A DNA stretch of 60,089 bases, counting the filler, from Sluysia triapertura (taxonomy: Eukaryota): the NCBI GenBank assembly GCA_046118255.1. It is 4 parts of 4 records of this genome, joined end to end, with 100 filler letters (N's around TTAATTAATTAA, not from the genome) between each part and the next. Parts side by side here need not be neighbours in the genome. Positions count along the whole stretch, not along the records: positions 1 to 11,418 come from JBJNIA010184957.1; 3 more parts are not named here. One strand, given 5' to 3'. The notes under the pieces were generated by a model. It was not told the origin of the DNA and searched no databases. It saw only the letters and a list, made by a program, of their open reading frames with translations. How positions within the stretch are numbered: position 1 is the first letter of the stretch; the number at the start of each line of letters is the position of its first letter. Positions 1,725 through 55,841 of the stretch are shown in pieces. Both the position numbers and the translations under genes were made by a program.

Positions 1725-2260
1725 TTAATCCTTTGTCATTCGAGAGAAGTGCATAAATTCCATTTTTTTTGTATTCAATGTAATTTTGTCGACCAAATTT
1801 TCAGATGTAATTTTAGTTAGGATAGGATTCGGATCTATTGGCCTATCTTTACTTTCATTTTCCTTTTTGCTGGTTTCTGTGTATGGATTGCTATTAAGAT
1901 CAATTGCATAATCTGCTTTTCTTATGGCATTGTCATTTTCTATTATTTCATCATCATTTTTAGTAATTCCAATCTCACCATCCTCCATTACTTGTTTCAT
2001 AAAAGAACGTGGAATTTTGCCCAAATCTATATTGTCATCGAACTTATCTAGAGTTTCATTTGCGAATTTGCATACAATACAACAGCATTTAGTAACTCAT
2101 TATCTTTTCCCAAAGGATAACTAAAATTGTTTAGAAGCTGATATGGTTCCAAAAGCCTGTTTGGAAATTTTAAGTTAAAATCATAAAATCCACTCAAATT
2201 ATTCATTGATTTAGAAAATTTTGTAAGTCCCCGATATATTGAGGGGTAAAATCCACGTAA
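1725..2260 (-). mobile_element. Possible LTR-retrotransposon integrase C-terminal relic
   Basis: FTPQYIG/TYKI near 2215-2250 resembles the GPY/F motif and is followed by a 99-aa hydrophilic ORF. Confidence 0.3.
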
Positions 2261-2504
2261 ATTTTGATCAAGATTAGATTAAACGCTCTAGGAGCTTTAA
2301 TCTCTAATAATATCTAGTTATTTTTATTTCTTTATATTAATATCTATACATTTGATAAGTCTTTTGTAGATTTTTGTTAAATAGAATAATTTAATTCTTG
2401 TGTTCATTGATTAATAAATTATTACGTTTATTTAGTAGTTAAAGACCCTCTTAAGTTAATTTATTTTGCAGAGACTTTATTTTTAAGTAATCTTTAACGC
2501 TTAC

Positions 2505-3473
2505 TGTAACCGAACCCTGCTAAAAAATATATTGCCGTAGGTTAAGTGTTAGAAAAACTACAGCATAATGGAACAAATACATTTAACTATATATTGAATT
2601 AAATTTAAAGTACCCGTCTCAATATAAAATAAATATTAGATAATTTTGTTGTATTCGAAGAATTATTTTATTTATAACATCATCTTTTTTAGATATAGTA
2701 CAAAAATAGCACAGATATTTTAAGTAAATAAAATATCGTTGTAAAACAAACTTTTATTATCGATAATACTTGTCGATGTCGTCGGATTGGAAAGACAATG
2801 TGTTAATTAATACTTGGTACAAAGAAACATTTTAATTATGCATATAAATTTGTTTATAAATAATGAATATATTGATTTATTTGTTCTATTTTTACATAAG
2901 CCATAACAATAGAAAAATGTGTTCTCAATTGTTTTTGTAAATCTATTTATTTATTAACTGTATAGATAGATAGATTTTCCATTGGTTTAATTAATAACAA
3001 TAAATATAATTTTCATTTATTCATTACATAAAAATCACATTTATTGTAACTATACAACGAAAGATAAGCATAAATTTTCTAATGGTTTGTTTTCGTTTTT
3101 AAACTATTTAAACAATTTTCTTCACTTTTTTCGATTAATTTATAAAATTATAATAAAACAAAAATATAATTTTAAATTAAAGTTATAAAATAAATATTAT
3201 AGCAACATCAAAATAAACACAAAGAAATAACGAAGCAACAAATAAATAGAACATGAATTCTAATAAGAAATTGAATAGTACGTGGATAAAATTGCCTCTA
3301 AACCATCTTAGAGTAAAATAAATTAGAGCTGAAATTATAGAACAGATACGATTATAACAAGAACAAAATTTAATATAAAAATAAAACAAAAGATTTATTT
3401 AATCTTGGAAATATTCTTTGAAACATTTTTAGTGTTTATGCTGTGGTTTTCTTAAATCTAAACCTACGGCAAT
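2505..3473. mobile_element. Non-autonomous TIR element beginning TGTAACCG (right TIR incomplete)
   Basis: 2531-2566 attgccgtaggttaagtgttagaaaaactacagcat is inverted at 3438-3473; the same end occurs at 59107. Confidence 0.65.
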
Positions 3474-4189
3474 GAGTGAACAATATGTTTAGCTGTTTCT
3501 TTATTAATAAATTTTCGAATATGTGATATTTTACTTAATTGATATTTATACTTTTTAACAATACAATTAATATTTTCTTCCATGTTCATTTTTGAATCCA
3601 TATAACATTTAAAAATTCATTGAAAACATTTACTCATTATTTTATAACATTAGAATCACAATTACACCTTAAAATTTAATCTAAAATGCGTAACATGAAT
3701 TTAAAATACCATAAGTTCTCAACATTTAGCTTTTTAGACTTTTAAAGATAATAAATAATGTCTAGAAATAAGATGTATAAGCAGAAAGATCATGTTATAA
3801 CAAAAGATTAATGCGGTTATATTTTTGTATTTTCATTATTATTATTATTATCCATATTTTGCTATAATTATCATTATTCCCGTCATTTTTTATTATCATT
3901 ATTATTACTGTAATTATTATGATTATTACTATTTCTCATCATTCCATTAAAACTTGCTATTTAGTGGTTTTTACCACTATCTATACTGACATTGCTGATA
4001 ATTGCCGTCTGGTTCTTGTGCCAAAAAATTAATTTTACCTCTTTACTTGATTGGATGTCCAGTCAGTACTATTTTATCATTATACATTGATGATATTAAC
4101 AATTTTTAGTAAAAGCCCAGTAATTAGATATCAGCGGCAAGAGTTATTAGAAAAATTTAAAAATTATTTTCTTTTTGGACGTAAAAATA

Positions 4190-4810
4190 ACAATTATAGT
4201 GAATGCAAGTTTGAAAAATTCAATTATGGTTCATTAAAATCAACTCAAGATAATGTTAAGCGAAAATATGAACAACTTTTATCCGAATTTAATAAACAGA
4301 TGGAACTAACTAAATGAATTACAATTGTCATAATTCTACTACATTTCTTAGTTTGGTTAATTCTGATAATACAATTCTTAATAAAGTGGTTGTCGTTTTA
4401 TCCACTGCATATTCTGAAGTGGAATATCTATTAAAAGAAGCTCATACTAAATTGCTACCAGCTACGTCGTTTCATGGTCAATGTAAAGAACCGAAAGATG
4501 ATGAAATGTTATATGTTCCTGTCATGATGGATGCGTTTATGCCAACGTTGAATGACATAATGCGTAATGTTAATCGCGTGAATGAAGTCAAATCATGGAG
4601 CTTTCTTGATTGATGCAAGTAACTTAAGTTTTGAGGCTATATATGAAACAATGTCATTCTTATTTTTTCTTCTGACATCATTTGATGCTAACCTTACAAA
4701 TCCTAGTGCGTTTTTAGATTGTTTAGGAACCTCTGCTAAACAAGACCCAGAAAGATCCAACCTTTTGAGATTTTACTGATGAATTTAGAAGGAAAGCTAA
4801 TCCAAGACTA
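4190..4810 (+). pseudogene. WASHC4: WASH complex subunit 4 (SWIP/KIAA1033) N-terminal fragment, frameshifted, with internal deletions
   Basis: Consecutive small ORFs match the WASHC4 N-terminus in order: FEKFNYGSLK..KYEQLLSEFNKQM; FLSLVNSDNTILNKVVVVLSTAYSEVEYLLKEAHTK; IDASNLSFEAIYETMSFLFFLLTSFD; NLEGKL (compare [36 protein letters not shown] and LKLEGQL). Recognised from memory. Confidence 0.8.
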
Positions 4811-5124
4811 TAGTAAATCACTGAAGATAAACGAAGTATTAAATCTAAAAATAATATGTTTAACTGGAAATGCCAATATAATTGATCAACCAACAGAACT
4901 TAGTATTTCTAATTTCTGTAGGATATCAGTTACTCCTTATCAGATTTCAGTGATGCTTCATTACACTAATCAGATTAAAGAAATTTTTTGTTCCAATCAA
5001 TACTTAGTGATCTGCGGTGTAATCGATTATTTGAGGAAATTGTGAGGGATTCGCGAATTCTATCAACAAAGTCTAGTGATAAAAGGATGAAGAAAAACAA
5101 AAGGAATTGTAAACGAATGCAAAA

Positions 5125-5730
5125 TTGTGTAACAGAATGCCATTATCAGATCGTAAAGAAGTCGGATGTCTGCTACATGATCCACAATTTGTTGAAGTCG
5201 AATTAATTTGTGATATGTTAAATGATGTTATAAAACGAAGTACTTGTAGAATATCAAACATCGAAAGTGTAGAACCGTCGATCGATATTTGTAATGTTAA
5301 TATTCAACAACCTACAACCCCGGTCTATAACTTCAATCACAGGCATCATGATTCAATTCAGAATTCACACTTAAATGAACATTACGAGACGGCATTATGC
5401 ACTTGTGACATGACACATTCTGGGGTTTGTCAAAAGCACGGTATTAATTGTCAATACTTACACTCTGTCCAAGAACTTAATGGATTGGAAATCAACTCGG
5501 CAGTCTACAACAGTCATCGTAATCGTATAAAAACTTTACAGGAATCCATAGATAGTTTCATTTTGGCAAAGTCCACATTAACAACGTCGCTCGAAATACT
5601 ACAGTCCGAAGAATCTACATCAGTCGAAATTAAAGTAATTTATAAACATTATTATGATGATAACTTGATTTTATATTTTTATTCAGTAATCGAAACATGG
5701 CCCGGCATGACACATAGATATTCTGTGTAA
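5125..5730 (+). CDS. CCCH zinc-finger-containing ORF (shared 3' module of the cassette family)
   Basis: HYETALC-x9-C-x6-CQYLHSVQEL (5380-5478) resembles YKTxLC...C...CxFAHxxxEL fingers of the Roquin/TIS11 type. Predicted 52-nt intron at 5635-5686. Confidence 0.6.
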   Translation: MCNRMPLSDRKEVGCLLHDPQFVEVELICDMLNDVIKRSTCRISNIESVEPSIDICNVNIQQPTTPVYNFNHRHHDSIQNSHLNEHYETALCTCDMTHSGVCQKHGINCQYLHSVQELNGLEINSAVYNSHRNRIKTLQESIDSFILAKSTLTTSLEILQSEESTSVEIKVIYKHYYDDNLILYFYSVIETWPGMTHRYSV

Positions 5731-8009
5731 TATTAATAAAAACTTAGGTTTTTAATAGTGTTCCTTTTTAATTTACTAAATGACAGAATAATTTCATTTA
5801 ATAAGTTAATGAGAAAATGTAATATTTATAAGTACAATAAAGTTTTAACAACAAATTTTAAAATAATAAATACATTGTTAACAATTTTAATAAAATCTTA
5901 TAATACAACTAATATTAAACCATCACATCACATTAAAGTGTATTAAAGAAAAAATAACTAATGCAAACGCCCATATAATGTTCAAGCAATACAAATACAC
6001 GTATATAAGTACTAATACACATATACACATATATCAACAATATACAATAATCTTGACAAAATTACGATTTATTAGTATTATTATTATAGTCTATCACTTG
6101 TACTGTTTTTCTATATTAATATATTCTTTATTCAATTATTATCATTTGAAAGGTTCACTTTAACGAACCTCAGTAAAATTATTATTGTTTCAATTAATTG
6201 TTTCAATTTAATTAATTGTTTCAGTTTAATTAATTGTTTCAATTTAACAACCAAAGTAAAATATTTCAGTTTTTTTAACTATTACGTTTAAATTAGTAAA
6301 ATTTAATATAAAATATCTCAAATTAAAATATCAATTCTTTCAGTCTCTTTATGAAAGATGCCTAGTAAATAAACTTCCACATTTTAAATTATATAATTAC
6401 AGTTCTTTAAAAGATTTCCTACATAATTTCATTAAGTATATATATTAAATCAATTTAGAATAAAATCTCCATAAGTTTCCTTTTACTTTTAAAATCCAAC
6501 GGCTAACCCTAACCATTAAGTCTAGATACGTTGATGAACTCACTTATATCTACTTTTATTCGTTTAACGTTTTTTCTAACAAAATGAAAAAAAATGATAG
6601 CATTATTGATGAAATTATCATGTTAATTGATTTTAAAAATTATAGTAATCAGTATAGGCGGTATATCAATTATCTCCATCGTTCAATTCGTATATCTTGA
6701 TCTCGTTCGGCGGAATTTTATAATAATTAATGATAATGATGATTTTTAAAGAATAAATATTTGCACAATATTATCTGCATACTAGTTTAAGTACTTAAAT
6801 ATTATAAAAAAGTAATTTCATTTTGGGTAACTAACATATGTACTAATTTTATACAAAAATTACTTAAAATGTAAGTAAGTAATAATTATTAATTATTGAA
6901 ATTAATTTGTGTGATTGGCTAAGACTCATTATACATTCTGATTCATTTTTAATCACAGGCATAATTTCAATTCAAGTTGACAGTGGTCAACATTCTTATT
7001 ATTCTAATTTAGACGCCATATTATTTCGAGAAAAATGATATTAATTAATAATTAAAAATGATAGAGCTACTTAATTGATTTTCCGTTTTACACTGATATT
7101 ATGTGATATTTAATTTTTTCATTACACGTTTAACAGAATTGAACTTAGTCGTTCTAATTCTTGTATTATTATTAAAAGATAAATAAAGGAATTAATTCTA
7201 AATAATTGCAGAATTTTTACACAAACTGGTTTCCGTAAATTAATAATTGTGTCGAATTGAAATTATTAATTACTTTAAATCAATACTATAGAAGTTATAT
7301 GATCAAAGATCCATGTAGTTACATTAATATAATGATTGATACAGAATATGTTAGGGAGTAAAAGGCATAAAATTTTGTCGTCATTTGACATAGTTACAGG
7401 CACGCCTACTCCACGTTTTAAGTGTGATCCTGATAAAATTTATTTTGTTTTAGATTGGTATTAAGATAAGATATCAATAGGCATTACTGAACAATCCTAA
7501 GGATTCAGAATTGTATATTCCTAAGTATCAAAATTATTCATTCCTAATTTGAATAGTTTCTTCATTTGCGGAATAATGGTAAAACATTTAGAAGATTATC
7601 TGACTTAGAGCTTTATTTACAACTTTAAATGATTTTTTTCTAAATGTGTTACTAAATCTTTCTTTATCTCAATTGCGGTTTAATAAACTTTCATTTTATT
7701 TCCATATTCAATTCGAGTTTTAAAAATGACACAATTTTCGCAGAAATAATCTCGATTAAATGTTTTGTTAAGATTTTCGCTCAACTTTGCATAATACTTA
7801 ATTTCAAAACTTTTATTAAAAAAATGATTGCATAAAAATAAATTTAAATAAACGCCATTTTTGATTTTACTACATTATCAAATAATTCGTTCTGTGGATA
7901 TTTATTTTTGGTAAGAAATGCAGAAATTATTGAAGGAGTATAAAAATTTTTATATTTTAACTTATATACTTTTCAGACATTCAATACATTATTCATTGAA
8001 ATGTACATA

Positions 8010-8720
8010 TAATCAAGTAATGAAATTGGATAGGTCTGCACTATCTTCATGTTGTAATTGTAAATACTTTCATAGGATCTATAAGAAAATTCTCAATCTT
8101 CGCCTAATCGACTGGATTAAAAGGTAATCTTATAAGCCCAACCCAGAAAGAACTTATCTACCCGGATGCTTGTTCAGGACATTCATATACTTCAGACTTT
8201 ACTACATGCTAATGCGGTGCACTTTCCGAAAACAACCTTATTTGTTTGTTGGCACGACATTTTCAATGCTTTCGGTTCAGTTCTTTACAGCTACTTGTTT
8301 TGTTTGCCCTCATATTTATTCTGCTGTTCCAGACTATCCTTTAGTCATGTCACTCTTACTTATCCATTGAATTCATGATTCGATTTGCTATCCAAAATAT
8401 TGAACCCTTCATTTACCTGAATTATTCCTTCGCCTTCCTAGCTCACGATGGTTATATTATGACTATCAAAATCAGTAGATTCTGTAAAAACACTCTTAAT
8501 AAACTAAATACTCTTTCTGCTCTTATAAATCTTAAATTCCGACCTGATAAATGTAGCTTTATTAATACAGCTAACTCCATGAGAAATTGTACGATTTATG
8601 ACACTCATTGATCGTTTTTGATTCAAAGATTCACTCTACTTACTTTGATTCTAAGGTGGTTGCTGATAAAAACAACTCTGTCCGAATTCTAACTTCACCT
8701 TATCCATAAAATTGGGACAA
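8010..8720 (+). mobile_element. Non-LTR retrotransposon reverse-transcriptase relic (RLE type, R2/NeSL/Hero-like)
   Basis: IYKKILNLRLIDW, LFVCWHDIFNAFGSV (compare WLDLxNAFGSV), DYPLVMSLL, FAFLAHDG, INLKFRPDKCS in the expected order; heavily frameshifted. Confidence 0.75.
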
Positions 8721-47160: not shown

Positions 47161-47574
47161 ATGATAGAACTTTTTGGTATAATAGATGAGATTTCACGGA
47201 AATTAAATGAAGTTGAACTTTTAGCAACTAACTATCAAACTAGAAACATGACATCTAACAAATGGGGTCGTACTGAAGATATTAATTGCACAGCAAGAGT
47301 AACAGAGACAATGGACAATCTTTGGTTAGACTATTATGAAGCCCGAACAATGGAAAAGACTTTATCTGATGTAAATATTAGTGAACAAAATAATAAAGTA
47401 ATTTACTCTTCATATATCCAGAATTTAACTAATTGCGATATTTTTTATTTCAGGGTCATGACAACCAGTGATTTTGCCATTCTATATACAAAATGGGCTA
47501 CGACTTTTATCAAATGTATTTATAACTTAAATCTTAGCATTTTAGTAAATAAATATTTTCCCATGTGTTTTTAA
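47161..47574 (+). pseudogene. Degenerate shared 3' module of the cassette family
   Basis: EDINC..TETMDNLW resembles copy F DNNC...TELTDNFSW; same AAA|GTAATT...TTTCAG intron. Confidence 0.45.
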
Positions 47575-54339: not shown

Positions 54340-55841
54340 GCTCGTTATAGATTCACTTTGTAAAAGATTCTAAAGAAAATAAAATAATGTAAATAGGTAT
54401 TAATGTTACTAATAAAGTTATGAATCAGGTTAAATTTAACAATTACTTTTGAGTCATGATGATTGTTGCTATCGAATGGCCTTGTGTCTAATGATGACAT
54501 CAGTAGTCTTATTCGTTGAATATGTTCCGTTAAGTTCGAAGTCCAAGAAAAGTTATCCGTTAGTTCGGTTGCATTGTGTGCGTATATACAATTATTGTCC
54601 GTCTGGAGTTGCTGCATACATGCACCAACCAGATCTGAAGTGTCGTGACTCATCATCCAGATCTGATTTTGTCTTTCGAGCCTCATTAGTGGATGTATCG
54701 ACTTGAAAAAAGCTCTCTTTCAAAGGCAAAATTTTTATGAGAATATGCCGCTGACTGGAATCTCTGTATGCGTCGAAATTCTAAGTTTGCGAATTGTTTC
54801 CGGTTTACTAAAGATTTAAATAATTCTAATTGACATTTACATAATCGGTTATGGTGAATTGGATTTTTTATTTCCAACATAACGAAAATATCTTGTAGAT
54901 TCTTTAACGTGACATTCAAATTATGTCACGTTATCAATAATAAACTAAAAAGAGTGACACTCTGAGCATCGTTTTTCTGTACGTCTACATAACTCAAAAA
55001 TTTTTTTAAATAGTTTCAAAATCATTTTTTACAAAATAACTATAACGGCATACATTTCTTTAAACTTTCGCTTAAATATATCACACGCATATCTACTTTT
55101 CATAACTTTAATTACATCTGACTAATTAAGTTTACCACAAATAAATTTTGGACCATCGGCATTTTGTTTGACATGGGATAAAATTTCTTTAACATGTGAA
55201 TCAGATTGTTTTACATAATGTCTTTGGATTCGATTAATTCTGTTTCCCACAGAACGACTAATGCTATTTACTAAATCTTTGATTTCACCAAAATAATCAT
55301 AGTAAAAAATATGTTCATCTAAAAATAAAAGATTATTAATTCGGCATTTGCTTTCAATTCTTTTGTTAGTTTAACTTGTACAATGAGGCCATCAGTTAGA
55401 ACATCTAATCGTAGAGTAGTCATTTCAAGACTTTCTTTATCATTAATTCTTGGGGTTGTCGTACTGTTTAATTCAACATTTATTAATTCTGAACGAGCTT
55501 TTAATCTAAAATTCATATCTTGTTTGCTGTTAATTGCTATTCAATGTTCTTAACATAAAATTGACGGTAAGCTACTGATTGAGAAAAAAGAATAATTTCT
55601 AAAATGAATTTTTATTATTTTTTAGTACTAATTGAGAAATGAATTTTTATTGGCTGCTCAACCAGAGTAATAAAAATAATGAACAGAGATACTCTGGTTT
55701 GACAACCAATAATAGCACTAATTATTTTTCACATTGACAGGACAACAACATGGAAACCAACAGTGTCGCCATTGATAGTGGTAATTATTAGTTAGTAAAA
55801 TTAGTAAATTAAAATTTAAATGATAATAATAATAATAACAA

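What the first reader, a model, noticed from the sequence alone, without database searches (positions are those of the whole stretch)
5380..5730. Shared resident 3' module: CCCH zinc finger plus a conserved terminal intron
A: HYETALCTCDMTHSGVCQKHGINCQYLHSVQEL...HRNRIKTLQESID. F (54561-54643, across a frameshift): HFRSGWCMYAATPDG/DNNCIYAHNATEL...HIQRIRLLMSSLD. D keeps only a trace (EDINC..TETMDNLW). All three then have a phase-0 intron starting AAA|GTAATT (5635-5686, 47398-47453, 54446-54370). Inference: the family has its own spliced, possibly RNA-binding gene, and captured fragments sit between the promoter and this module, creating chimeric genes. A retained intron argues for DNA-level mobility.
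Basis: partly seen in the sequence, partly recalled or inferred. Interest (0 to 1): 0.72.

Follow-up and report, generated by a model that had tools for sequence, protein, structure and literature searches.

The report
Mobile element carrying CCCH-finger fusion gene
The finding is the tail of a dead copy of a 2-2.5 kb mobile DNA element, present in many copies in this AT-rich genome, that fuses a stolen piece of a host gene (WASH complex subunit 4) to its own conserved zinc-finger module; whether the proposed terminal intron is spliced could not be tested.

Summary
Window 3599-5927 (+) is one 5'-truncated copy, frameshifted at least five times, of a dispersed mobile element.

Full copies start TGTGGTG(A/G)CCAACC and end CCATCACA. 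They have perfect 5-bp target duplications, and one has a matching empty site elsewhere in the genome.

The element has three parts:
- a 5' module with a TATA-like box;
- a body, here an intron-free fragment of WASH complex subunit 4 (Pfam positions about 2-250 of 572);
- a 3' module made of a linker, one TTP/TIS11-like CCCH finger, a predicted helix, the 52-55-nt "intron", a 3' UTR and the terminus.

The CCCH module shows purifying selection (dN/dS 0.41 against 0.69 and 0.89 in shifted frames). The WASH4 part does not (0.71 against 0.57 and 0.68), and the two parts have discordant relationships between copies. This fits a resident 3' module carrying a passenger.

The intron is unproven because no RNA runs exist. 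In its favour, GT, AG and a stop right after AG are kept, and one copy seems to lack exactly this segment. Against it, the unspliced frame also stays open.

The element class is unresolved: a non-autonomous integrase-type DNA element or a solo LTR.

The parts
3599..3800 (+). Remnant of the family's 5' module. This copy is truncated: full copies run about 345 nt further upstream to the terminus TGTGGTG(A/G)CCAACC. It contains diverged ~100-nt subrepeats that carry an AAAACCATCA motif like the 3' end.
   Evidence: 1528 first-look candidates, 40 of 40 scored significant, matches start at window 3599-3606. Alignments of 5' ends. The missing 5' part is not elsewhere in the window.
3776..3781 (+). 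TATA-like box (TATAAG) inside a block (..AGATGTATAAGCAGAAAG..) kept in nearly all aligned 5' modules. Its role as the promoter of the element's ORF is inferred.
   Evidence: Alignment of 23 5' modules. Function is inference only.
3835..3933 (+). (ATT)n microsatellite between the 5' module and the ORF.
   Evidence: Tandem Repeats Finder. Also present in other copies.
4192..4805 (+). Passenger: intron-free fragment derived from the N-terminus of WASH complex subunit 4 (Pfam WASH-4_N positions about 2-250 of 572). In this copy it is broken into frames 1/3/1/3 (shifts near 4305-4314, 4585-4589 and 4760-4779). The codon that is ATG in locus L080 reads AAT here (4192-4194).
   Evidence: PF14745, E 6e-11 on 4314-4610. 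At least 54 places in the genome, almost all within positions 2-250 (a few reach about 280; the four at 230-536 are host-gene exons). Intact 253-258-aa ORFs in L056 and L063 map onto the window across frame changes. dN/dS 0.71 against 0.57 and 0.68 off frame.
4806..5379 (+). Linker, the first part of the resident 3' module. Further frame changes near 5021-5033 and 5155-5190. The boundary with the passenger at about 4805 is where many copies stop resembling the window.
   Evidence: ORFs of L011, L002, L007 and L016 bridge 4582-5290 in one frame. Homology breaks at 4789-4817 in L056-L066, L071, L072 and L080.
5380..5478 (+). Single CCCH zinc finger of TTP/TIS11 flavour: lead-in HYETALC (family YYKTALC), C-x9-C-x6-C-x3-H, then SVQEL.
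   Evidence: In-frame dN/dS of the module is 0.41 against 0.69 and 0.89 in shifted frames.
5479..5634 (+). C-terminal part of the module (..AVYNSHRNRIK.LL.SID.F..), predicted helical, ending ..VEIK.
   Evidence: Alignment A1. The AlphaFold2 model shows a long helix but at low confidence, pLDDT 53.8.
5635..5686 (+). Putative phase-0 terminal intron: GTAATT .. TAAC-type branch-like motif .. T-rich tract .. CAG. It can also be read as coding (VIYKHYYDDNLILYFYS..).
   Evidence: Of 35 copies, 28 have GT, 28 have AG and 25 have both, with lengths 43-67 and a mode of 55. It is the best conserved stretch of the 3' region and shows no codon periodicity. No conserved RNA fold. The unspliced frame is open in most copies. 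L051 apparently lacks exactly this segment. No RNA data.
5687..5689 (+). TAA directly after the AG; this would end the protein at ..VEIK if the segment is spliced out.
   Evidence: 22 of the 25 GT+AG copies have TAA, TAG or TGA here. The divergent copy L062 has CAG followed by TGA.
5690..5927 (+). 3' UTR-like tail with AATAAA motifs and the element's 3' terminus CCATCACA (5920-5927).
   Evidence: Homology between copies ends at this motif and the flanks differ. Complete copies L081 and L023 end the same way and are followed by the target duplication.
5125..5730 (+). The only long open frame left in this copy (201 aa). It reads through the putative intron.

Best explanation
Window 3599-5927 is a dead copy of a non-autonomous mobile element of about 1.9-2.5 kb. 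The host genome is AT-rich (about 25% GC), 619 Mb and highly fragmented.

The element inserts as a DNA unit with retroviral-integrase-like ends (5'-TGTG...CACA-3') and a 5-bp target duplication. It carries one transcription unit:
- a 5' module with subrepeats and a TATA-like box;
- a long single-exon ORF;
- a short segment with all the signals of a terminal intron, followed at once by a stop codon;
- AATAAA motifs and then the terminus.

The ORF is a fusion. Its N-terminal half is a cDNA-like (intron-free) fragment of host WASH complex subunit 4, which drifts neutrally. Its C-terminal half is the family's old resident module: a linker, one TTP/TIS11-like CCCH finger and a predicted helix. This half has been kept under purifying selection while the family diversified.

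Modules have been exchanged between element lineages, and other elements with the same 5' module carry other bodies.

Shown: family membership, termini, target duplication, empty site, domain homologies, the selection contrast, module discordance, and decay of this copy.

Inferred: promoter function, RNA binding by the finger, splicing of the 52-nt segment (I put it at roughly 55%), mobilisation in trans by an integrase-type enzyme, and the cDNA origin of the WASH4 piece.
For: Family: 47 DNA matches and 150 of 150 scored protein matches, from 3671 candidates.

Termini and 5-bp duplications: copy L081 is 2526 bp with ATGAT, and L023 is 1934 bp with AATAT.

Empty site: the two flanks of L081 abut on C220145 with a 5-bp overlap.

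Not an LTR pair: no LTR-type internal repeats. No shared sequence beyond either end among 13 5' ends and about 10 3' ends.

L003 is an internal-deletion derivative that keeps the 5' end.

WASH-4_N homology reaches E 2e-23, but only positions about 2-250. The host gene's later exons lie on C200836 with introns of 296 and 497 nt.

Finger.

Selection contrast.

Discordance between parts: window against L062 is 59-67% aa in the WASH4 part but 29% in the CCCH module; window against L046 is the reverse.

Variable bodies behind the same 5' module. One body hits PF12627.

Frameshifts in this copy.
Against: - The inverted repeat at the ends is only 7-8 bp, and no partner encoding a transposase or integrase was identified. 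The 981 integrase candidates show no meaningful co-location.
- The same ends and duplication length fit a solo LTR.
- Splicing and transcription are untested.
- The dN/dS tests use only 11 and 7 ORF-intact pieces chosen for lacking stops, in a strongly AT-biased genome.
- The host gene's own N-terminal exons were not located, so 'intron-free relative to the parent' is inferred from exon sizes.
Confidence: 0.55

Rival explanations
1. The units are solo LTRs (or LTRs whose internal parts the fragmented assembly did not join) of an LTR retrotransposon with unusually long, ORF-bearing LTRs. On this view the subrepeats and TATA box are U3, and the AATAAA motifs and terminus are R-U5.
For: TGT..ACA-type ends and a 5-bp duplication are the LTR norm (PMC6839031). 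Enhancer-like subrepeats sit upstream of a TATA-like box. The genome holds many integrase genes with long open frames. An empty-site comparison cannot tell a solo LTR from a stand-alone element.
Against: None of about 10 3' flanks shows a shared primer-binding site or internal region, and none of 13 5' flanks shows a shared polypurine tract. No contig in the hit lists carries two separated copies. Bodies differ between copies with the same 5' kilobase, and modules are exchanged. A 1.5-kb ORF with a terminal intron inside an LTR would have few precedents.
Confidence: 0.22
2. The 52-nt segment is not an intron but ordinary coding sequence: a conserved aromatic and hydrophobic C-terminal tail (..KVIYKHY.DD.NLILYFYSV.ETW), with the protein ending a few codons later.
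For: 23 of 33 copies keep the frame through the segment, and most have no stop inside it although it is about 85% A+T. Length changes are mostly multiples of three. A similar peptide can be read in the very divergent copy L062. The two real host introns seen here are 296 and 497 nt, not about 50.
Against: There is no third-position excess, and the segment is more conserved than the coding sequence before it: mean deviation from the majority base per column is 0.106 against 0.168. The triplet indels lie in an ATT/ATG microsatellite, which slips in threes anyway. GT, AG, a TAAC-type motif and a T-rich tract are all kept, and a stop follows the AG in 22 of 25 copies, as TAA, TAG or TGA and again in L062 at a shifted position. 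L051 appears to have lost exactly the segment.
Confidence: 0.4
3. It is a dispersed host multigene family (WASH4-like/CCCH proteins) that spread by ordinary duplication, not a mobile element.
For: There is one transcription-unit-like organisation with an ORF, and purifying selection on part of it.
Against: Homology ends sharply at the same two motifs in unrelated flanks. Perfect 5-bp duplications and an empty site. Hundreds to thousands of mostly broken copies. Nested copies.
Confidence: 0.03

Closest known systems
Pack-type (transduplicating) DNA transposons: Pack-MULEs, Pack-TIRs in animals (PMC8277862), Turmoil-1 of C. elegans (PMC2572040)
   Same: Non-autonomous elements with defined ends and target duplications that carry host gene fragments, can amplify as 'pseudo-TEs', and give chimeric transcription units.
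   Different: Here the inverted repeat is only 7-8 bp. The captured piece is intron-free and fused in frame to a conserved resident ORF that is not a transposase. No autonomous partner is known.
Integrase-related DNA transposons: Ginger1, Ginger2/TDD (PMC2836005) and GingerRoot (PMC6839031)
   Same: TG..CA (TGTNR-type) ends like LTR retrotransposons. Short duplications: TDD-4/5 5 bp, Ginger1 4 bp. For metazoan Ginger2 the two papers differ: PMC2836005 reports 4 bp, PMC6839031 says 6 bp. GingerRoot is mostly 6 bp and often carries gene fragments.
   Different: Those families have inverted repeats of 40-270 bp and encode an integrase-like transposase. Neither was found here.
Solo LTRs of Gypsy/BEL-type retrotransposons
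   Same: TGT..ACA ends, 5-bp duplication, upstream subrepeats plus a TATA-like box, and poly(A) signals near the 3' end.
   Different: No paired copies, primer-binding site or polypurine tract were seen. The body is variable, with a 1.5-kb ORF.
TTP/TIS11 (ZFP36) family CCCH fingers (PDB 1rgo, 1m9o)
   Same: Lead-in YKT.LC, the order C..C..C...H, an aromatic residue before the His, and ..EL after it. The best structural-database sequence matches are to this group.
   Different: A single finger instead of a tandem pair. Spacing is C-x9-C-x6 instead of C-x8-C-x5. It scores below Pfam cut-offs, and the rest of the module has no relatives in 1.84 billion proteins.
WASH complex subunit 4 (SWIP/WASHC4)
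   Same: Clear homology to the first ~250 positions of Pfam WASH-4_N (up to 90 bits).
   Different: Only the N-terminal fragment is present. It has no introns, occurs in many copies, evolves neutrally and is fused to an unrelated module.

Membership tests
CCCH (C3H1) zinc finger, TTP/TIS11 type | Cys-Cys-Cys-His ligands with spacing in the accepted range (C-x4-15-C-x4-6-C-x3-H) | tested here: met
   C-x9-C-x6-C-x3-H at 5398-5463. The ligands are the majority residue across 14 aligned modules, though single copies have lost one.
CCCH (C3H1) zinc finger, TTP/TIS11 type | Score above a curated Pfam CCCH model cut-off | tested here: not met
   The only hit is PF25427 at 24.8 bits against a cut-off of 31.1, and PF00642 does not hit. 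L062 scores 20.7 bits. Support comes instead from PDB phmmer and the reverse profile search.
CCCH (C3H1) zinc finger, TTP/TIS11 type | Tandem pair of fingers, each with a (R/K)YKTELC lead-in | tested here: not met
   The lead-in is present (family YYKTALC, window HYETALC), but each module has only one finger.
CCCH (C3H1) zinc finger, TTP/TIS11 type | Zinc-dependent binding of single-stranded (AU-rich) RNA | not testable with these tools
   Needs protein and a binding assay. The AlphaFold2 model was too weak to use, pLDDT 53.8.
Spliceosomal intron | GT..AG borders with a branch-like motif and pyrimidine tract, kept among copies | tested here: met
   GT in 28, AG in 28 and both in 25 of 35 copies. 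TAAC/TTAAT motif and T-rich tract.
Spliceosomal intron | RNA molecules that join the two exons | not testable with these tools
No RNA run holds the stretch. The one run found is DNA contigs.
Spliceosomal intron | Evolves unlike coding sequence (no frame conservation, stops tolerated) | tested here: inconclusive
   No codon periodicity, but the frame stays open in most copies.
Pack-type TIR DNA transposon | Terminal inverted repeats | tested here: inconclusive
   Only TGTGRTG(R) against its complement CAYCACA, 7-8 bp.
Pack-type TIR DNA transposon | Target site duplication of fixed length, and an empty site | tested here: met
   5 bp in both complete copies. Empty site on C220145.
Pack-type TIR DNA transposon | Captured fragment with a parental host gene elsewhere | tested here: inconclusive
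   WASH-4_N positions 2-250 lie in the element, and host exons for positions 230-536 lie on C200836 and C72534. The parental N-terminal exons themselves were not identified.
Pack-type TIR DNA transposon | Autonomous relative with the same ends that encodes the transposase | tested here: inconclusive
   Not found. The integrase hit list shares only one contig with the element lists, and in the wrong geometry. Further DNA could not be fetched.
Ginger / TDD / GingerRoot integrase-type DNA transposons | TG..CA ends and a 4-6-bp duplication | tested here: met
   Family features are taken from PMC2836005 and PMC6839031.
Ginger / TDD / GingerRoot integrase-type DNA transposons | Inverted repeats of 40-270 bp | tested here: not met
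   No inverted repeat beyond about 8 bp joins the two ends.
Solo LTR / LTR retrotransposon | Paired direct copies around gag-pol, with a primer-binding site and polypurine tract | tested here: inconclusive
   None among 13 5' flanks and about 10 3' flanks, and none downstream in this window. However, contigs average 2.3 kb.
WASH complex subunit 4 | Full WASH-4_N domain (572 positions) plus the C-terminal domain | tested here: not met
   Only positions about 2-250 are covered in any element copy.

The most novel reading that the evidence does not exclude
A previously undescribed kind of non-autonomous mobile element. It has integrase-type ends without LTRs or long inverted repeats, and it maintains its own TTP-like RNA-binding module with a terminal intron. 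It acts as a fusion platform: host coding fragments, taken from mRNA, are placed in frame between its promoter and this module, and the chimeric genes are then spread in many copies and shuffled between element lineages.
Probability: 0.25. Interest if true: 0.75.

Novelty: new variant of a known kind. Interest (0 to 1): 0.52.

Why it matters
Elements that pick up host gene pieces are well known in plants and only sparsely documented in animals. Their cargo is usually seen as dead freight.

This family is different in four ways:
- It keeps a non-transposase reading frame (a single CCCH finger module) under selection.
- It fuses host coding sequence to that frame, in frame.
- It exchanges modules between lineages.
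- It moves with LTR-like ends but, as far as could be seen, without LTRs.

If the module binds RNA and the fusions are expressed, this would be a natural exon-shuffling machine. It would also pose a puzzle about what a non-autonomous element gains from encoding an RNA-binding protein.

It is also a practical warning for annotating this genome. Dozens of 'WASH complex subunit 4' and many 'zinc finger' hits are transposon copies.

Tried and rejected
**RNA evidence.** The look-up of sequencing runs gave one run only. It consists of DNA contigs, so read laying could show neither expression nor splicing. No joint skipping 5635-5686 appeared among the listed ones.

**Word-index protein searches.** The CCCH module and an intact WASH4-like ORF both found nothing. 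The protein atlas gave only sub-threshold CCCH clusters.

**Structure.** The AlphaFold2 model had mean pLDDT 53.8, so no fold search was run.

**RNA families and folds.** Rfam found nothing in the piece. There is no conserved RNA fold over the 'intron' region: alifold was empty and the z-score was +0.86.

**5' subrepeats.** Tandem Repeats Finder does not detect them because they are too diverged.

**LINE-like origin.** I considered it because many copies seem 5'-truncated. The full ends, the fixed 5-bp duplication and the lack of A-tails speak against it. Several 'truncations' are divergence, internal deletion (L003) or other bodies.

**Helitron, CACTA, hAT, Transib.** Rejected on end sequences and duplication length.

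**Second empty site.** None found for L023.

**Organism.** Not identified; the run's organism name is coded.

Full report
**1. The observation**

The piece is very AT-rich: 20-35% GC in 500-nt windows.
- The finger runs from 5380 (HYETALC..) to 5478 (..SVQEL).
- The ligands are C 5398, C 5428, C 5449 and H 5461, giving C-x9-C-x6-C-x3-H.
- The frame completes a codon at 5634. GTAATT begins at 5635, TTCAG ends at 5686, and the next three bases are TAA.

So the described features exist at the stated coordinates.

**2. Is it a CCCH finger?**

- Pfam gives one weak hit, PF25427 (UNK-like CCCH): E 2e-5, 24.8 bits, below its cut-off of 31.1.
- phmmer against all PDB chains puts a worm CCCH protein, TIS11d, unkempt, TTP and roquin on top (E 6e-4 to 0.3). 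The alignments run through the YKT.LC lead-in and the C..H..EL end.
- A profile of 14 family modules (alignment A1) was searched against 1.84 billion representative proteins. It found ten proteins at E <= 1e-3. All matched only over the finger, and the six I scanned are multi-finger CCCH proteins with PF00642 scores of 41-198 bits.

The finger homology is therefore real. It is a single finger, with each of the first two spacers one residue longer than in TTP. The rest of the module has no detectable relatives anywhere.

**3. What the finding belongs to**

DNA and protein searches of the window's own genome (619 Mb in 263,945 contigs) show a large dispersed family. There were 47 DNA matches at 67-87% identity, and all 150 scored protein places were significant, out of 3671 first-look candidates.

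Similarity between the window and other copies runs from 3599 to 5927. It ends on the right at a conserved CCATCACA, after which every copy has different sequence.

On the left the window copy is truncated. Other copies continue about 345 nt further, to a conserved TGTGGTG(A/G)CCAACC, again with unrelated sequence beyond.

Two loci hold complete copies with perfect 5-bp duplications:
- L081 (C35374), 2526 bp, ATGAT;
- L023 (C211613), 1934 bp, AATAT.

The two flanks of L081 lie next to each other on another contig. The 5' flank maps to C220145:1682-1948 and the 3' flank to 1944-2000. They overlap by exactly the 5 bp of the duplication. This is an empty site, so the unit is a discrete insertion.

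It has no LTR-like repeats of its own. L003 is an internal-deletion derivative that keeps the 5' end, and nested or abutting copies occur.

**4. Anatomy**

*(a) 5' module.* It has diverged ~100-nt subrepeats that contain an AAAACCATCA motif like the 3' end, a conserved TATA-like block (window 3776-3781) and an (ATT)n run. It is itself highly repeated: 1528 first-look candidates.

*(b) Body.* In this copy and most CCCH-bearing copies, the body is homologous to the N-terminus of WASH complex subunit 4.
- PF14745 hits at E 6e-11 here and up to 2e-23 elsewhere.
- At least 54 places in the genome match. Almost all cover only positions about 2-250 of the 572-position model.
- Later exons of the host gene (positions 230-489) sit on C200836, with ordinary introns of 296 and 497 nt.
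- In the element this part is one continuous ORF in intact copies (253-258 aa in L056 and L063).
- That ORF runs on, without interruption, into the linker and the finger lead-in (L063; L011 bridges 4582-5262).

*(c) 3' module, from about 4805.* It consists of a linker, the finger, a predicted helix, the 52-55-nt segment, a tail with AATAAA motifs and the terminus.

The window copy is dead. Mapping intact ORFs onto it needs frame changes near 4305-4314, 4585-4589, 4760-4779, 5021-5033 and 5155-5190. The codon that starts the ORF in L080 reads AAT here.

**5. Resident module against passenger**

Pairwise Nei-Gojobori dN/dS, with the same alignment shifted by +1 and +2 nt as controls:

| Part | Pieces used | In frame | Shifted +1 | Shifted +2 |
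|---|---|---|---|---|
| CCCH module | 11 stop-free | 0.41 | 0.69 | 0.89 |
| WASH4-derived part | 7 | 0.71 | 0.57 | 0.68 |

The CCCH module shows constraint; the WASH4 part shows none.

The two parts also tell different histories.

| Comparison | WASH4 part | CCCH module |
|---|---|---|
| Window vs L062 | 59-67% aa identity | 29% aa identity |
| Window vs L046 | no tblastn match | 52% aa identity |

Many copies stop resembling the window at exactly 4789-4817, the junction of the two parts.

Family HMMs find the WASH4 part 280-650 nt upstream of the CCCH module in most copies. They do not find it in one subfamily (L021, L022, L026, L028, L051, L054).

Of 11 loci chosen by the 5' module, about three carry the WASH4 body. 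The others diverge from one another after the first 750-1000 nt. One such body hits PF12627, a domain of CCA-adding and poly(A) polymerases, at 23.5 bits, just over its cut-off of 22.

One correction is needed: the WASH4 fragment is the standard cargo of the CCCH-bearing lineages, not one of many.

**6. The 'intron'**

No RNA run holds this stretch. The single run found consists of DNA contigs. Only comparative evidence is left, and it points both ways.

For an intron:
- Among 35 distinct copies, 28 have GT, 28 have AG and 25 have both. In 22 of those 25 a stop codon (TAA, TAG or TGA) follows the AG at once.
- The very divergent copy L062 has GTAATT and a T-rich tract, then CAG followed by TGA at a position shifted by three bases.
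- The segment is the best conserved part of the whole 3' region. The mean deviation from the majority base per column is 0.106, against 0.168 for the coding sequence before it and 0.25 for the 3' UTR. There is no excess at third positions.
- There is no RNA fold to explain this conservation.
- L051 lacks the segment. Read as AAA followed by TTGGTGAAAC, it matches its subfamily's exon 2 start (AG followed by TTAGTGAAAC) with one change. That amounts to a precise loss. MAFFT's own placement differs and costs three changes.

Against an intron:
- 23 of 33 copies keep the reading frame through the segment, and most are stop-free although it is about 85% A+T.
- Length differences are mostly multiples of three. 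However, they lie in an ATT/ATG microsatellite.
- The two host introns seen are six to ten times longer.

I put splicing at about 55%. The open frame could simply be frozen by the constraint on the splicing signals.

**7. Mechanism and class**

The ends (TGTG..CACA) and the 5-bp duplication are the signature of a retroviral-type integrase. They are shared by LTR retrotransposons and by the integrase-related DNA transposons Ginger/TDD and GingerRoot (PMC2836005, PMC6839031). TDD-4/5 make 5-bp duplications, and GingerRoot often carries gene fragments.

Unlike those DNA transposons, this element has only a 7-8-bp inverted repeat, and no partner enzyme was found. The genome has about 981 integrase candidates, some in frames over 1000 aa, with no telling co-location.

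The solo-LTR alternative cannot be excluded in an assembly whose contigs average 2.3 kb. Still, none of 13 5' flanks and about 10 3' flanks shows a shared internal sequence. The variable bodies and module exchange also fit a stand-alone, Pack-like non-autonomous element better.

The intron-free WASH4 fragment and the apparent precise intron loss in L051 suggest that reverse-transcribed mRNA has entered the family's history at least occasionally. This is inference.

**8. Verdict**

The thing is a new variant of a known kind, a gene-fragment-carrying non-autonomous element. Three features are unusual: a selected non-transposase CCCH module, in-frame fusion with host coding sequence, and LTR-like ends without LTRs.

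The copy in the window is a relic. Transcription, splicing, RNA binding and the mobilising enzyme remain to be shown.

Noticed in passing
window 3491-3581: The stretch just upstream of the truncated 5' end has a summed contig depth of about 1.7 million in run X1, against roughly 15-30 for single contigs. It is a hyper-abundant repeat or satellite, and it may be what cut off the element's 5' end.
   Followed up: no
L002/L033 (C51284) about 2320-2345: A second element of the family begins (TGTGGTGGCCAACC) about 12 nt before the expected 3' end of the first. This is a nested or abutting insertion, and the 5' module of the second copy follows about 300 nt later.
   Followed up: partly
L003 (C250445) 185-484: An internal-deletion derivative: the first ~230 nt of the element's 5' end are joined directly to the part that matches window 4751 onwards.
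   Followed up: partly
L074 (C213007) 2357-2671: An element with the same 5' module carries a different body. Its 105-aa ORF hits PF12627 (PolyA_pol_RNAbd, found in CCA-adding and poly(A) polymerases) at 23.5 bits, just over the cut-off. It may be another captured host fragment.
   Followed up: partly
L083 (C200836) 1983-3560: Real exons of the host WASH complex subunit 4 gene (Pfam positions 230-489), with GT-AG introns of 296 and 497 nt; the second ends in a long (ATT)n run. The gene's N-terminal exons were not located.
   Followed up: partly
L051 (C10463), minus strand, about 560-590: This copy lacks the 52-55-nt segment, apparently from the G of GT to the G of AG. It is the only such case among 35 copies.
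   Followed up: partly
whole genome G000: About 981 first-look integrase (Pfam rve) candidates, several inside open frames of 900-1660 aa. Integrase-bearing elements look recently active in this genome.
   Followed up: no
window 2172-2301 and 6490-6543: Two short stretches outside the element match parts of other fetched loci (L004 1612-1735 and L021 174-224), so other repeat families lie in the piece. ORFs elsewhere in the window (1728-2024 minus strand, 7918-8608) have no Pfam hit.
   Followed up: partly
L076 (C204911) 2147-2269: A very divergent finger (..C.H.....G.F.RFG.....YAHNA.E..) sits behind the shared 5' module and an unrelated body.
   Followed up: no
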